Shown here: positions 47,900 to 53,080 of the stretch, piece after piece
Layout of the letters: every line of letters starts with the position of its first letter
Numbering within the stretch: the stretch's first letter is position 1
DNA from: Macrostomum lignano
Lineage: Eukaryota
NCBI GenBank assembly: GCA_002269645.1
Contig: NIVC01001779.1
Span: 62,001-126,000, forward strand
Direction: 5' to 3'
DNA length: 64,000 bases
Notes under the pieces: generated by a model
The model's database searches: none
Seen by the model: only the letters and a program-made list of their open reading frames with translations
What the model was told of the DNA's origin: nothing
Program-made: the position numbers and the translations under genes

Positions 47900-50800
47900 A
47901 TGAGTAGAAATATAAACATTAGCGGCGGCAACGGCGCGGGCCCGCCACCGATGCCCTATCCTTTGAGTTCTTCCCTGCCTCCTAGTGCCGATTTTTTTAA
48001 CGCTCAATTTGCTATGCAGCCTCAGCAGCAGCAGAACCTGCGTCCTCAGAGTCCTCCAGCTCATCTTCATCATTCTCAACAGCAGCAGCGTCAGCGCATG
48101 CAGAGTCCGCCACAAGCCATGCTGTCGTCCAGTTTCCCTTCAAATTCATTTCCCGCGGCTATGATGCAGCAGAGGCCGCCGATGCCTCCTCAGCAGCCGC
48201 AGCCGCCGTTGCCAACACCGCAGCAGATTGGCATGGCCATAATGAGCTCAATTGAAGATCACCTGATGCACCAGCAGCATCAGCAGCAACAATTTGCCCA
48301 TTCCCAATCGATGCACTTTCCGGGACATCAGCAGTTTCCTCATCAGCATCCTCAGCATCATCAGCAGCAGCAGCATCCGGGTGCTGTTCATGCCCAGCAG
48401 TTCCAGCATCCCAGGCCGCCGCCCTCACAGTTTCCGCCTCAGCCTCATCCTCAGCATCAGCATCATCACCCTGGCCAGCAGCAGCGGCCGCCTTTGCCAC
48501 AGAATTTCGTTGCCCAGCAACAACAGCAGCAGCAGCCGACGCCACCTCCGCCAGCTAAGCAGGATCCGCCTCTGCCCCAGGAGGTGGCCATGATTGATAT
48601 GGCAGCTGGCCTGGGAGCTGCTTGGTCTACTGGAGACGATAGGCAGCAACAGAGGCAGGGACAGTCGGTTGCTATGGCAACCAAGCAGAAGCAGCCGCAT
48701 CAACAGGTGGGGTTGCAGCCTCCCTCCCTAATTGCTAGTTAGTCAGACCACAGAGTCAGCTTAGAATATTTCTTAAACCAGCAAAGTTCCGCTTACCTTG
48801 CCTACCCCATCAGGTGGTGCAACCAGTTCGTAGACAGCGCTTGAACTCGCTGCATCGAAGCAGCTCAGATCCGGAGTTTTTCACTGGTCGAAGGCGACAC
48901 TTTGTGCCTGTGCAGCACAAGCAGCAGCAGGCAGCTGGGAAGCAGCCTCCTCATCCTGCAGCCAATAAGCAGGCAGCGATAGATGCCGGCCTCGCGCGAC
49001 TTCGATTAAACAGTTGCAAAGCTGATCAACTGCAATCCATTGTGACAGAGCCTGGTGCTGCCGCTGCTAGGTAATTAAAGAAATTCAGCTGTGTCTGTTG
49101 GTTCTCAGAGATCTCAGAGATCTCAGAGAGTCGCCCTGATTGTCTCAGTGAATCGCCCTGATTATCTCATAGAATCGCCCTGATTATCTCATAGAATCGC
49201 CCTGATTATTTCATAGAATCGCTATGATCATCTCATTGAATCGCTCTGATTATCTCAGAGAATCGCCCTGATTGTCTCAGAGAATCGCCCTGATTGTCTC
49301 AGAGAATCGCCCTGATTGTCTCAGAGAATCGCCCTGATTGTCTCAGAGAATCGCCCTGATTATCTCATAGAATCACCCTGATTGTCTCATAGAATCGCCC
49401 TGATTATTTCATAGAATCGCTATGATCATCTCATAGAATCGCCCTGATTGTCTCAGAGAATCGCCCTGATTATTTCATAGAATCGCTATGATCATCTCAT
49501 AGAATCGCCCTGATTGTCTCAGAGAATCGCCCTGATTGTCTCAGAGAATCGCCCTAATTGTCTCATAGAATCGCCCTGATTATCTCATAGAATCGCCCTG
49601 ATTGTCTCAGAGAATCGCCCTGATTGTCTCAGAGAATCGCCCTGATTGTCTCAGAGAATCGCCCTGATTGTCTCAGAGAATCGCCCTGATTGTCTCAGAG
49701 AATCGCCCTGATTATCTCAGAGAATCGCCCTGATTGTCTCAGAGAATCGCCCTGATTGTCTCAGAGAATCGCCCTGATTGTCTCAGAGAATCGCCCTGAT
49801 TGTCTCAGAGAATCGCCCTGATTGTCTCAGAGAATCGCCCTGATTGTATCAGAGAATCGCCCTGATTATCTCATAGAATCGCCCTGATTGTCTCAGAGAA
49901 TCGCCCTGATTATCTCATAGAATCGCCCTGATTGTCTCAGAGAATCGCCCTAATTGTCTCATAGAATCGCCCTGATTATCTCATAGAATCGCCCTGATTG
50001 TCTCAGAGAATCGCCCTGATTGTCTCAGAGAATCGCCCTGATTGTCTCAGAGAATCGCCCTGATTATCTCATAGAATCGCCCTGATTGTCTCAGAGAATC
50101 GCCCTGATTGTCTCATAGAATCGCCCTGATTGTCTCAGAGAATCGCCCTGATTGTCTCAGAGAATCGCCCTGATTATCTCAGAGAATCGCCCTGATTGTC
50201 TCAGAGAATCGCCCTGATTATCTCATAGAATCGCCCTGATTGTCTCAGAGAATCGCCCTGATTATCTCATAGAATCGCCCTGATTGTCTCATAGAATCGC
50301 CCTGATTGTCTCAGAGAATCGCCCTGATTATCTCATAGAATCGCCCTGATTGTCTCAGAGAATCGCCCTGATTGTCTCAGAGAATCGCCCTGATTATCTC
50401 ATAGAATCGCCCTGGTTATCTCATAGAATCGCCCTGATTGTCTCAGAGAATCGCCCTGATTATCTCAGAGAATCGCCCTAATTGTCTCAGAGAATCGCCC
50501 TGATTATCTCAGAGAATCGCCCTGATTGTCTCAGAGAATCGCCCTGATTGTCTCAGAGAATCGCCCTGATTGTCTCAGAGAATCGCCCTGATTGTCTCAG
50601 AGAATCGCCCTGATTGTCTCAGAGAACCGCCCTGATTGTCTCAGAGAATCGCCCTGATCGCCCTCACCAAGAACAAACCAATCAATAAAATGAGCAATAC
50701 GTCACCGCAGGCCGGAAGCATCAGCAAACAGCAACAGCCAGGCGCAAGCAGAGCCGGATGAATTGACCAGCGAGCCGATGCCAGCCGCACCATCAACTAT

Positions 50801-53080
50801 ACAAGAGACAGACGTAGATGAAACTGCTCAAACAGCCGAGGCAGCAGCTGAAGAGGGGGATGATGAAGCTCCAGATGAAGCCGAAGTCCACGGCCTGGAA
50901 GATCCAATGAGGTGTCCACCTGACACGGACGCAACTCTGCACGAGGCCTGCTCAGCTCTGCTCACGTATCGCAGATCAACTGGCGAAGCTGATTCTAACG
51001 AGGAAGTTGAAGATGAAGAGGCGACAGTTTCGGCGGAAGCTGCGGCAGTCGCTGCGGCTGAAGATGCCGCTAAGCATGCTCACCTGGATAAGATCGTGTC
51101 TCATGAAGCTCTAGCAGAGAAGCTGAGCACCCAAGCTGAGGAGAAACCGGTCCCGTTGCAGACTACTTGGATTCTGTATCTGAGTAGAAATAGCGAATGG
51201 ACAAGTAACGAAGATTATTTGGCCCGCCTGCAGCGATTGAATACTATTAAATCTGTGCAGAGCTTCTGGGCCACTCTGCGCTATGTGCCTAAAGTGGATC
51301 TGCTGCCTACTAAAGCGTGTTATCATTTTATGCGCGACGATAGGCTGCCTATCTGGTGAGTTGGATTGGCTCACGGCCTTCGATACATGCATCTGATACT
51401 CACTGGATTCTGCGATCATGAGTCACATCCTTGAGTAACTTGAGTCACATCCTTGAGTAACTTAAGTCGCATCCTTGAGCACCTTGAGTCACATCATTGA
51501 GTAACTAGAATCGCATCTGTGAGCAACTTGAGTCACATCCTTGGGTAACTTGTCACATCCTTGAGTAACTAGAGTCACATCTTTAAGTAACTTGAATCAC
51601 ATCCTTGAGTAACTTGAGTCACATCTTTGAGTAAATTGAGTTACATCTTTGAGTAAATTGAGTTACATCCTTGAGTCACTAAGATTAAGTGACCATGAAG
51701 ACATCCTTGAGTCACTAGGGTTCAGTGGCCATGAAGACATCCTTGAGTCACTAAGATTAAGTGACCATGAAGACATCCTTGAGTCACTAAGATTACTAAG
51801 TGACCATGAGGCCATGATATTATTGACATTTAGGGATACTTTAATTATTAGAAACATTATTAAGGATCAATTTTTTAGAAATTCCATTTTTTTGTATCGA
51901 AGAGTTTCAAATAAACAAAAGTCATTAATAAAGTATGCATCCTATATTCCACTCCCCTAGGGAGACTGACTACCACATCGAAGGCGGCTCGTTCAGATTC
52001 AAATGCCCCAAACTACACACAGCCGCCATCTGGCAAGAGCTGCTGCTAGCCGCTATTGGAGAACAGCTCAGCGATTGGCTGGCTAAGGGCGACGATGTAT
52101 CCGGTGTTAGCTGTTCGGTGCGAGAGAGCCAGGATATTGTAGAAATATGGCACACTAGAGCTGATCTGGCTAGCAAGGCTAGCATCTTTGAGAATGTGCC
52201 CAAACTGTTGCCAAGGAATACTAAATTTCTTGCCTCGTTTCACAAGGGTGAGTGGAACAATAAGTACAACTGTATTATTGTGCTAACACTAAATAAAGTA
52301 CAGTCTAATGTTCATTAAACCTTCACATTAGTGTACTCTCATCTCCTATCAACCCCCGTTACCCTAGTGTACACTCATCTCCCACCCAAACGTACACTCG
52401 ATCAACCCTCATCCCAATGTACATTTGATCAACTTTTGTCCCAATGTACACTCGATCAACCCCCACCCCATGTACACTTAATCAACCCCCACCCCATGTA
52501 CACTCGATCATCTCCTACCGCCCTATGTACACTTGATCAACCCCCACCCCATGTACACTCGATTATCTCCTACCCCATGTACACTCGATCAAACCCCACC
52601 CCAATGTACACCTGATCAACCCTCACCCCAATGAACACTCGATCAAACCCCACCCCAATGTACATCTGATCAACCCTCACCCCAATGAACACTCGATCAA
52701 CCCCCACCCCAATGTACACTCGATCAACCCCCACCCCAATGAACACTCCATCAACCCTCACCCCAATGTACACTCGATCAACCCCCACCCCAATGAACAC
52801 TCCATCAACCCTCACCCCAATGTACACTCGATCAACCCCCACCCCAATGAACACTCCATCAACCCTCGCCCCAATGTACACTCGATCAACCCTCACCCCA
52901 ATGAACACTCGATCAACCACTTCAATCTCCGCAGCCTTCCGAGACAACTACCGCGCGCACCTGCAGCAGCAGAAACGGCAGCAGCTGGCCGCAGACAGCC
53001 AGACTTCGTCATCGCCGCCCGGCCTTGGCGGCGGTCAGCGCGTGAAACGATCGCAACAAAGAAAATCCATTGGCCATTGA
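47900..53080 (+). CDS. EIF4E3: Class III eIF4E (eIF4E3-like) with ~500-aa Q/P/H-rich and acidic N-terminal extension, ~713 aa (exons 47900-48706, 48814-49070, 50711-51355, 51961-52247, 52935-53080)
   Basis: The core VPLQTTWILY...EDYLARL...VQSFW...YHFMRDDRLPIWE...GGSFRFK...IWQELLLAAIGEQ...DDVSGVSCSVRESQDIVEIW matches human EIF4E3. All four introns are GT-AG with matching phases (0, 2, 2, 1). Confidence in the core is higher than in the linkage of exons 1-2. Confidence 0.85.
49125..50660. repeat. 22-bp minisatellite (GAGAATCGCCCTGATTGTCTCA) in eIF4E3 intron 2
   Basis: About 70 tandem units. Confidence 0.97.
51420..51810. repeat. ~22-bp degenerate repeat (AGTCACATCCTTGAGTAACTTG) in eIF4E3 intron 3
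   Basis: Tandem units that grade into a longer unit. Confidence 0.85.
52340..52920. repeat. 27-bp minisatellite (AATGTACACTCGATCAACCCCCACCCC) in eIF4E3 intron 4
   Basis: Tandem units; this explains the TPMYTRST ORFs. Confidence 0.93.

What the first reader, a model, noticed from the sequence alone, without database searches (positions are those of the whole stretch)
47900..53080. Class III eIF4E fused to a ~500-aa prion-like and acidic N-terminal extension
Seen: five phase-consistent exons give ~713 aa. Exon 1 (269 aa) is Q/P/H-rich with poly-Q and repeated QQF-type motifs, exon 3 begins with an E/D/A-rich tract, and the cap-binding core keeps W43, W73, W102 and E103 with Tyr at the W56 position (class III signature). 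Established: canonical eIF4E3 is about 220 aa, and Q-rich low-complexity domains drive RNP condensation (for example CPEB/Orb2, TIA-1). Inference: a cap-binding protein that self-assembles into granules (germ granules or chromatoid bodies) and sequesters or stores capped, perhaps TMG-capped trans-spliced, mRNAs. I do not recall this architecture being described.
Basis: partly seen in the sequence, partly recalled or inferred. Interest (0 to 1): 0.8.

Follow-up and report, generated by a model that had tools for sequence, protein, structure and literature searches.

The report
Flatworm eIF4E3 with giant disordered extension
This is a real gene of the flatworm Macrostomum lignano, backed by a transcript-derived annotation, that joins an ordinary class III mRNA cap-binding domain (eIF4E3) to an unusually long (~500 aa) disordered N-terminal region; it is already deposited as a "hypothetical protein", and what the extension does is unknown.

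Summary
Five GT-AG exons on the + strand (47900-48706, 48814-49070, 50711-51355, 51961-52247, 52935-53080) encode 713 aa. The C-terminal ~210 aa are a class III eIF4E: Pfam IF4E 1.5e-29, best solved relative mouse eIF4E3 at 3e-40, Trp at W43 and Tyr at W56. The window is M. lignano Mlig_3_7 contig NIVC01001779.1. GenBank CDS PAA64128.1 covers exactly 47780-53080 and ends with this protein. That annotation was built from RNA-seq transcripts, so the exon 1-2-3 linkage has indirect transcript support. A second, homeologous copy keeps all exons and splice sites. Its exonic indels are 18, 3 and 3 nt. dN/dS across the extension is 0.14 (p=8e-9), so the extension is translated and constrained. It is predicted disordered, has no homolog outside M. 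lignano among 1.84 billion proteins, and is about 12 times the median class III N-terminus. Two uncharacterised class III proteins from assembled environmental or run data carry shorter (~200-236 aa) P-rich extensions. "Prion-like" and granule-forming remain inference: Q+N peaks at 28 per 80 residues, Pro is 20%, and no expression or localisation data were found. Verdict: an unusual variant of a known family, moderately interesting.

The parts
47773..47778 (+). TTTCAG, a probable spliced-leader trans-splice acceptor immediately before the annotated mRNA/CDS start
   Evidence: It is the only [T/C]TNCAG match in the 300 nt upstream of the ATG. That motif is the one enriched at M. lignano SL acceptors. 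The deposited 5'-partial CDS starts at 47780. It is not conserved in the homeolog, so this is an inference.
47779..47899 (+). 5'UTR: no upstream ATG, in-frame with the ORF but without a Met
   Evidence: The first in-frame upstream stop is TAA at 47753-47755. The SL's terminal AUG would open only a 4-codon uORF (MIDS*).
47900..48706 (+). Exon 1, aa 1-269. Q/P/H-rich low-complexity region (aa 1-215 = 47900-48544) with a predicted helix at aa 107-136.
   Evidence: dN/dS is 0.136, and the indels against the homeolog are 18 and 3 nt.
48707..48813 (+). Intron 1 (107 nt, GT-AG)
48814..49070 (+). Exon 2, aa 270-354 plus 2 nt. Basic segment (net +8) with RxRxxS sites RQRLNS and RLRLNS.
   Evidence: dN/dS is 0.106.
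49071..50710 (+). Intron 2 (1640 nt), almost entirely a 22-bp tandem array (49121-50658, about 70 copies)
   Evidence: The homeolog's intron 2 is only 429 nt.
50711..51152 (+). Exon 3, first part, aa 355-502. Acidic A/E/D-rich tract (net -31 over aa 355-500) with predicted helices at aa 428-444 and 456-494.
   Evidence: dN/dS is 0.194.
51153..51355 (+). Exon 3, second part: start of the IF4E domain (aa 503-569 plus 2 nt of the W570 codon). Holds W508 (W43), Y524 (W56) and SVQSFW (V69/W73).
51356..51960 (+). Intron 3 (605 nt), with 22-bp and 36-bp tandem repeats. It splits the codon of the cap-stacking Trp (W102 equivalent).
51961..52247 (+). Exon 4, aa 570(3rd nt)-665 plus 1 nt: the rest of the IF4E domain (to aa 653 = 52210). 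Holds E571, R624 and W633.
   Evidence: Core pLDDT is about 90.
52248..52934 (+). Intron 4 (687 nt), with a 27-bp tandem array at 52383-52918
52935..53080 (+). Exon 5, aa 666-713 plus the TGA stop (53078-53080): end of the core followed by a Q/S/G/R-rich tail
53160..53165 (+). AATAAA polyadenylation signal, 80 nt after the stop

Best explanation
This is the Macrostomum lignano eIF4E3 (class III eIF4E) gene. It is present as at least two homeologous copies, and its product carries a lineage-specific, translated and selectively constrained N-terminal extension of about 500 aa that is intrinsically disordered.

Shown:
- The gene model, the class III identity and fold of the core, and retention of the cap-contacting residues (W102, E103, R157 and W166 equivalents, with Tyr at W56).
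- Retention of the dorsal (S/T)VxxFW motif that binds eIF4G or 4E-BPs.
- Coding constraint on the extension.
- Absence of the extension from other known class III proteins.

Inferred:
- The core binds the m7G cap and an eIF4G-type partner, as vertebrate eIF4E3 does.
- The extension has three parts: neutral Q/P/H-rich, then basic with RxRxxS sites, then strongly acidic next to the core. It most likely acts as a regulatory and multivalent interaction region. It could tether the cap-bound mRNA to other proteins or RNP assemblies. The acidic tract and flanking helices could also modulate the adjacent cap- or partner-binding surfaces.
- Partitioning into RNP granules is plausible but unproven.
For: - Gene model and phases.
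- Core identity: Pfam IF4E 1.5e-29. Mouse eIF4E3 4b6u scores E 3e-40, against 6e-17 for eIF4E2 and about 1e-11 to 1e-14 for class I. The best Foldseek match is eIF4E3 4b6v.
- Key residues are mapped, and SVQSFW is found.
- Class III definition (Trp at W43; Cys in vertebrates or Tyr at W56): PMC1260017. Invertebrate class III proteins have Tyr or Phe there.
- The window is NIVC01001779.1, and CDS PAA64128.1 equals this model.
- The GenBank annotation is derived from StringTie/TACO/TBONE/TransDecoder transcripts (PMC5730564).
- The homeolog L001 keeps the five exons and their splice sites. Exons are 95-97.7% identical, against 84-92% for flanks and introns.
- Extension dN/dS is 0.138, with 26 of 40 changes synonymous against 22% expected (p=8e-9). 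Exonic indels are 18, 3 and 3 nt.
- Disorder: 385 of 713 residues have pLDDT below 50, almost all in the extension. A charge-hydropathy calculation agrees.
- The extension (aa 216-502) has no homolog outside M. lignano in 1.84e9 representative proteins.
- The N-termini of 115 other class III proteins have a median of 41 aa and a maximum of 236 aa.
Against: - I inspected no RNA-seq, cDNA or peptide data directly. The transcript support comes through the deposited annotation.
- A shorter isoform, for example from M378 or M421 in exon 3, cannot be excluded.
- The core deviates from other class III proteins at two conserved Trp positions (W46->Y511, W113->F581), so cap affinity may be altered.
- No recognisable short motif (YxxxxL-phi, PAM2, RGG, FG) explains what the extension binds.
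- No expression or localisation data were found.
Confidence: 0.7

Rival explanations
1. The Q/P/H-rich exon 1 is a prion-like domain that self-assembles, so the protein scaffolds germ granules or chromatoid bodies and stores capped (possibly TMG-capped, trans-spliced) mRNAs.
For: - The low-complexity region is long, Q-rich, disordered and under constraint.
- A 33-residue Pro-free Q/H-rich segment is predicted helical (aa 107-136, pLDDT 72-82) and could mediate oligomerisation.
- Human eIF4E3 enters stress granules (PMC5006505).
- The N-terminally extended LeishIF4E-3 enters storage granules (PMC6435199).
- M. lignano mRNAs are widely SL trans-spliced.
Against: - Q+N peaks at 28 per 80 residues, below the classical Q/N-rich threshold. 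Pro is 20% and interrupts nearly every stretch, and Asn, Tyr and Gly are scarce.
- EIF4E3 is not in the held parts of the neoblast or germline-enriched tables.
- In the worms with solved structures, the TMG-cap binders are not class III proteins: the Ascaris eIF4E-3 m2,2,7G complex is 3m94 and the Schistosoma eIF4E is 3hxg. Their class I assignment and TMG binding by the Schistosoma protein are from my own knowledge.
- Nothing here tests cap specificity.
Confidence: 0.15
2. The main functional product is a short eIF4E3, made by trans-splicing or initiation at exon 3 (M378 or M421). On this view the long form is a minor isoform.
For: - The exon 3 acceptor (caccgcag|G) could in principle accept the SL.
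- In-frame Met codons lie at aa 378 and 421.
- An older automatic model (P0017) starts at M378.
Against: - Both GenBank transcript-derived models span exons 1-5.
- Exons 1-2 show dN/dS of 0.11-0.14 and only in-frame indels, so they are translated.
- P0017 is a frameshifted fragmentary prediction, not a transcript.
Confidence: 0.12
3. The core has lost efficient cap binding, and the protein acts as a cap-independent scaffold or decoy for eIF4G or 4E-BP-type partners.
For: W46->Y, W113->F, R112->S and K162->I relative to eIF4E1. The first two differ even from other class III proteins.
Against: - The residues that directly contact the cap are kept (W102, E103, R157, W166), with an aromatic Tyr at W56.
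- R112 and K162 are also absent in other class III proteins.
- Core dN/dS is 0.04, which indicates strong constraint.
Confidence: 0.08
4. Annotation artefact: exons 1-2 belong to a separate gene that was fused in silico to eIF4E3.
For: M. lignano transcriptional units are often polycistronic precursors. An intron-2 read-through would stop immediately (AGg taa).
Against: - The upstream neighbour is a complete single-exon POLD4-like gene 2.8 kb away.
- Exons 1-2 have no stop codon of their own.
- Phases and splice sites are conserved in the homeolog.
- TBONE cuts transcriptional units at experimental SL and poly(A) sites, and it kept these exons in one gene in both copies.
Confidence: 0.03

Closest known systems
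Vertebrate eIF4E3 (class III eIF4E; mouse structure 4B6U/4B6V)
   Same: - Best sequence match (3e-40) and best fold match; Trp at W43.
- W102, E103, R157, W166 and the (S/T)VxxFW motif are kept.
- R112 and K162 are absent, as in other class III proteins.
- Human eIF4E3 binds eIF4G1/3 and PABP1 and enters stress granules.
   Different: - 713 aa instead of about 200-250 aa.
- Tyr rather than Cys at the W56 position, which is the invertebrate state.
- W46->Y and W113->F.
- The conserved class III N-terminal motif (LSxSPxF...) is not detectable.
Uncharacterised class III eIF4Es P0103 (413 aa, JGI sample 3300018925, intronless 1687-nt contig) and P0115 (376 aa, Logan assembly of run ERR6349559)
   Same: A class III core preceded by a long P/Q/S-rich low-complexity N-terminal region (about 200-236 aa).
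   Different: - The extensions are less than half as long and have no detectable sequence similarity to the M. lignano extension.
- They keep the class III 'FSPS...STI' N-terminal motif next to the core.
- The source organisms are unknown.
Trypanosomatid EIF4E3 and EIF4E4 (N-terminally extended eIF4Es)
   Same: - A cap-binding core plus a long, poorly conserved, phosphorylated N-terminal extension, in organisms with SL trans-splicing.
- The LeishIF4E-4 extension binds PABP1, and LeishIF4E-3 moves to storage granules under starvation.
   Different: - They are protist eIF4Es, not the metazoan eIF4E3 (class III) group, and arose independently.
- Their extension works through PAM2 motifs, and none is present here. 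The PAM2 pattern was recalled from memory.
Q/H-rich or Q-rich low-complexity domains of RNA regulators (Orb2/CPEB, TIA-1); from my own knowledge, not tested
   Same: A Q- and H-rich low-complexity region attached to an RNA-directed domain.
   Different: Here Pro makes up 20% and breaks up the Q/H runs, Q+N is below the Q/N-rich threshold, and no assembly data exist.

Membership tests
eIF4E family (Pfam PF01652) | Significant match to the IF4E profile, and the eIF4E fold | tested here: met
   E 1.5e-29, 103 bits against a cutoff of 28.7, aa 503-653. AF2 core pLDDT is about 90 and the top 50 listed Foldseek PDB matches are all eIF4E-family structures.
Class III eIF4E (eIF4E3), as defined by Joshi et al. 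2005 | Trp at the position of human eIF4E1 W43 | tested here: met
   W508. Definition in PMC1260017.
Class III eIF4E (eIF4E3), as defined by Joshi et al. 2005 | Cys (vertebrates) or Tyr at the position of W56 | tested here: met
   Y524. Other invertebrate class III proteins have Tyr or Phe here.
Class III eIF4E (eIF4E3) | Closer to eIF4E3 than to class I or class II members | tested here: met
   3e-40 for eIF4E3, against 6e-17 for eIF4E2 and 1e-14 or weaker for class I. The named homologs are mostly annotated 'eIF4E type 3', the rest being generic or hypothetical names, at 35-48% identity.
Class III eIF4E (eIF4E3) | Conserved short N-terminal motif (LSxSPxF...I...) directly before the core, seen in 111 homologs. 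This is my own observation, not a published criterion. | tested here: not met
   A profile built from 111 N-termini gives no hit anywhere in aa 1-501, while shuffled controls reach up to 4.0 bits.
Functional cap-binding eIF4E | Cap-contacting residues W102, E103, R157 and W166, and the eIF4G-binding (S/T)VxxFW motif | tested here: met
   W570, E571, R624, W633; SVQSFW at aa 536. This is sequence-level evidence only.
Functional cap-binding eIF4E | Measured binding to m7G (or TMG) cap and to eIF4G | not testable with these tools
   Needs recombinant protein and cap-analogue pull-down or titration.
Prion-like / Q/N-rich domain | At least 30 Q+N in an 80-residue window (Michelitsch-Weissman criterion, recalled from memory) | tested here: not met
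   The maximum is 28 per 80, starting at aa 144. Q+N+H reaches 44 per 80.
Prion-like / Q/N-rich domain | PLAAC or PAPA score above threshold; experimental self-assembly | not tested
   No PLAAC is available here. The composition (P 20%, H 10%, little N, Y or G) argues for a proline-interrupted disordered region rather than a classical prion-like domain.
Intrinsically disordered region | Low predicted order and low sequence complexity | tested here: met
   pLDDT is below 50 for most of aa 1-453. A charge-hydropathy calculation places all four extension segments on the disordered side.
Trypanosomatid-type extended eIF4E (EIF4E3/4) | PAM2-type PABP-binding motif(s) in the extension | tested here: not met
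   No match to the PAM2 pattern or to a relaxed version. The pattern was recalled from memory.

The most novel reading that the evidence does not exclude
M. lignano has turned its only detected class III eIF4E into a self-associating cap-binding scaffold. The constrained Q/H-rich helix and the P/Q-rich region would drive assembly into RNP granules. The basic, phosphorylatable segment and the acidic tract would switch cap or eIF4G binding on and off. The result would be a single polypeptide that both captures and stores mRNA 5' ends in stem or germ cells.
Probability: 0.12. Interest if true: 0.7.

Novelty: new variant of a known kind. Interest (0 to 1): 0.42.

Why it matters
eIF4E3 is the least understood eIF4E class, and its members are almost uniformly small: the region N-terminal to the core has a median of 41 aa. 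A 713-aa version whose extension is clearly under purifying selection shows that the class can acquire large regulatory or scaffolding regions. M. lignano supports transgenesis and RNAi knockdown, so localisation, cap specificity (m7G versus the TMG caps of SL trans-spliced mRNAs) and function can be tested directly. If the extension drives granule assembly, it would be a compact natural example of a cap-binding protein fused to its own condensation module. If it does not, this remains a lineage-specific elaboration of modest general importance.

Tried and rejected
- **Full-length homolog search.** Low-complexity words saturated the candidate list, and only M. lignano proteins were returned.
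- **Extension-only search of 1.84e9 representatives.** It found only M. lignano models, so no ortholog alignment of the extension was possible.
- **MAFFT placement of 'SEPMPAAPSTI' (aa 375-385) on the class III N-terminal motif.** This suggested the acidic tract might be an insertion. A profile of 111 class III N-termini gives no hit in the real extension, while shuffles score up to 4 bits, so I rejected the idea as an alignment artefact.
- **Motif scans.** No YxxxxL-phi 4E-binding motif, PAM2, RGG or FG. Pfam finds nothing but IF4E at E up to 1.
- **Literature.** Searches for eIF4E3 + Macrostomum, for the gene ID Mlig032536, and for eIF4E + prion-like domain + N-terminal extension found no description of this protein.
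- **Expression.** EIF4E3 and Mlig032536 are absent from the held supplementary tables of the neoblast/germline studies. Most of those files were cut when stored, so this is only weak negative evidence.
- **SL AUG as a longer start.** Rejected: it is out of frame and stops after 4 codons.
- **Gene fusion with the upstream gene.** Rejected: the upstream gene is a complete POLD4-like ORF.

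
Full report
**1. What is in the sequence.**
- Reading window 47500-53500 and splicing the candidate exons gives a 2142-nt ORF on the + strand.
- The exons are 47900-48706, 48814-49070, 50711-51355, 51961-52247 and 52935-53080. All four introns are GT...AG.
- The product is 713 aa and exon 1 is exactly 269 codons.
- The first in-frame stop upstream of the ATG is TAA at 47753-47755, with no other ATG in between.
- An AATAAA lies 80 nt after the stop.
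  - aa 1-215: Q 25%, P 20%, H 10%, with five poly-Q runs and QQF at three sites.
  - aa 270-354: net charge +8.
  - aa 355-500: A 21%, E 18%, D 9%, net charge -31.

**2. Identity of the core.**
- Pfam finds one domain, IF4E, at aa 503-653 (E 1.5e-29).
- Against solved structures the best match is mouse eIF4E3 (4b6u, E 3e-40). This is far ahead of eIF4E2 (6e-17) and class I eIF4Es (1e-14 and weaker).
- An AlphaFold2 model has pLDDT of about 90 over the core, and its best Foldseek match is again eIF4E3 (4b6v).
- Mapped onto human eIF4E1:
  - Kept: W43->W508, V69->V537, W73->W541, W102->W570, E103->E571, R157->R624, W166->W633.
  - Changed: W56->Y524, W46->Y511, R112->S580, W113->F581, K162->I629.
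- Joshi et al. define class III by Trp at W43 and Cys (vertebrates) or Tyr at W56 (PMC1260017). In my alignment of invertebrate class III proteins the position is Tyr or Phe. Tyr is therefore the expected state and not a peculiarity.
- R112 and K162 are also missing from other class III proteins. W46->Y and W113->F are specific to the M. lignano protein.
- The eIF4G/4E-BP-binding motif (S/T)VxxFW is present as SVQSFW.

**3. Source, and whether exons 1-2-3 are really linked.**
- The homolog search identified Macrostomum lignano.
- The window is identical to GCA_002269645.1 contig NIVC01001779.1.
- The deposited CDS PAA64128.1 ('hypothetical protein BOX15_Mlig005160g1, partial', 753 aa) maps exactly to window 47780-53080. 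It equals my 713-aa model plus 40 residues read from the 5'UTR.
- The GenBank annotation of this assembly is not ab initio. It comes from a genome-guided RNA-seq transcriptome (StringTie + TACO). TBONE cuts it at experimentally mapped spliced-leader and poly(A) sites, and ORFs are called by TransDecoder (PMC5730564).
- The annotated CDS starts at 47780, so the mRNA presumably starts at about 47779. That is right after TTTCAG (47773-47778), the only match to the [T/C]TNCAG motif enriched at M. lignano SL acceptors in the 300 nt upstream.
- The SL's terminal AUG would be out of frame and would stop after four codons.
- The older WormBase/UniProt models (P0002, P0130, P0131) also join exon 1, 2 and 3 sequence.

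**4. Independent evolutionary test.**
- A second copy lies on NIVC01000012.1 (PAA94291.1, locus L001). It sits in the same neighbourhood, with a POLD4-like gene upstream and a PF12044 metallopeptidase downstream.
- It has the same five exons, and the splice sites are conserved.
- Exons are 95-97.7% identical, while flanks and introns are 84-92% identical.
- Intron lengths differ widely between the copies: 1640 vs 429 nt and 605 vs 1407 nt.
- Exonic indels are 18, 3 and 3 nt.
- Nei-Gojobori dN/dS by region:

| Region | dN/dS |
|---|---|
| aa 1-215 | 0.136 |
| Exon 2 | 0.106 |
| Acidic part | 0.194 |
| Whole extension | 0.138 |
| Core | 0.04 |

- In the extension, 26 of 40 substitutions are synonymous against 22% expected (p=8e-9). 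For aa 1-215 alone p=2.6e-5.
- The weak internal DNA repeats of exon 1 all have periods that are multiples of 3.
- The extension is therefore translated in this frame and under purifying selection in both copies.

**5. How unusual is it?**
- A profile search with the class III core returned 415 proteins at E<=1e-20.
- The best 120 are 185-266 aa long, except P0103 (413 aa) and P0115 (376 aa).
- In 115 non-M. lignano homologs the region before the core has a median of 41 aa. The two longest are 236 and 201 aa and the next is 82 aa. Here it is 501 aa.
- P0103 and P0115 carry P/Q/S-rich low-complexity N-termini. P0103 is encoded without introns on a 1687-nt contig from JGI sample 3300018925.
- Low-complexity extensions on class III cores therefore exist elsewhere, but they are shorter and unrelated in sequence.
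- The M. lignano extension (aa 216-502) has no homolog outside the species among 1.84 billion representative proteins.
- None of the named hits listed is from another flatworm.
- The conserved class III N-terminal motif (LSxSPxF...) is not detectable in the M. lignano protein.

**6. Properties of the extension.**
- AF2 gives pLDDT below 50 for 385 residues, almost all in aa 1-453.
- It predicts helices at aa 107-136 (pLDDT 72-82; this is the only long Pro-free Q/H-rich stretch), at aa 428-444, and at aa 456-494 directly before the core.
- A charge-hydropathy calculation places all extension segments on the disordered side.
- Q+N peaks at 28 per 80 residues, and Pro at 20% interrupts nearly every stretch.
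- There is no YxxxxL-phi, PAM2, RGG or FG motif. RxRxxS sites occur at aa 64, 276 and 331.
- I therefore describe it as a tripartite disordered region (Q/P/H-rich, then basic, then acidic) and not as a demonstrated prion-like domain.

**7. Mechanism.**
- Best supported: a cap-binding and eIF4G-binding class III eIF4E whose lineage-specific disordered region adds regulation and multivalent interactions.
- The analogies are functional only.
  - Human eIF4E3 binds eIF4G1/3 and PABP1 and enters stress granules (PMC5006505).
  - Trypanosomatid N-terminally extended EIF4E4 binds PABP1 through its extension (PMC6379680).
  - LeishIF4E-3 moves to storage granules, regulated by phosphorylation of its extension (PMC6435199).
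- Granule scaffolding, germline or neoblast specificity and TMG-cap binding remain untested. EIF4E3 was not found in the held portions of the neoblast/germline tables, and no paper describing this protein was found.

**8. Verdict.**
The architecture and class are right. 'Prion-like' and the granule function are speculative. 'Undescribed' is true of the searched literature but not of the databases.
- This is a new variant of a known kind, of moderate interest, and it is experimentally tractable in a transgenic model flatworm.

Noticed in passing
window 46545-47687, 49121-50658, 51419-51809, 52383-52918, 53326-54980, 55337-56414, 56826-57140: The gene sits among large tandem arrays with 16-36-bp units: about 71 copies of 16 bp upstream, about 70 copies of 22 bp filling intron 2, about 20 copies of 27 bp in intron 4, and about 71 and 47 copies of 23-bp units downstream. 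Array sizes differ strongly between the two homeologous copies (intron 2 is 1640 vs 429 nt; intron 3 is 605 vs 1407 nt). The intron 2 unit and the first downstream unit (53326-54980) share a GAGAATCGCC core.
   Followed up: partly
window 44551-45096 (+): A single-exon ORF encodes a DNA polymerase delta subunit 4 (POLD4)-like protein (annotated PF04081 in both homeologous loci). It lies 2.8 kb upstream on the same strand.
   Followed up: partly
window ~57264-61560 (+): The downstream gene has a PF12044 metallopeptidase domain (named from the homeolog annotation). One of its introns (about 58280-60130) is a long repeat that reads as IYLS/IHPS in three frames and gives the extreme GC skew of -0.76 at 58001-60000.
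   Followed up: no
window 47773-47899: If the mRNA is SL trans-spliced at TTTCAG|A, the AUG at the end of the M. lignano spliced leader opens a 4-codon uORF (MIDS*) about 100 nt before the real start. The acceptor-like site is replaced by GCATG in the homeolog, so the two copies may differ in how their 5' ends are made.
   Followed up: partly
P0103 (L002, JGI sample 3300018925) and P0115 (L003, Logan assembly of run ERR6349559): Class III eIF4Es of 413 and 376 aa, with P/Q/S-rich N-terminal extensions of about 200-236 aa, from unidentified organisms. A larger group of unnamed JGI/Logan class III proteins shares an 'AFSPSN..SPSTI' N-terminal motif with them.
   Followed up: partly
UniProt models P0002 and P0003 (M. 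lignano): Older automatic models of this gene are fragmentary or chimeric and misleadingly named ('Swi3 domain-containing', 'START domain-containing'). P0003 fuses eIF4E3 exons 4-5 to the downstream metallopeptidase gene.
   Followed up: no
window 62476-62874 (-): An ORF with an EF-hand-like motif (DRDGDGQIDITEL), flanked by further tandem repeats (61820-62435 and 62838-63880).
   Followed up: no
window 51353-51355 / 51961: Intron 3 splits the codon of the cap-stacking Trp (W570, the W102 equivalent; TG|G). I did not check whether this intron position is shared with eIF4E3 genes of other animals.
   Followed up: no
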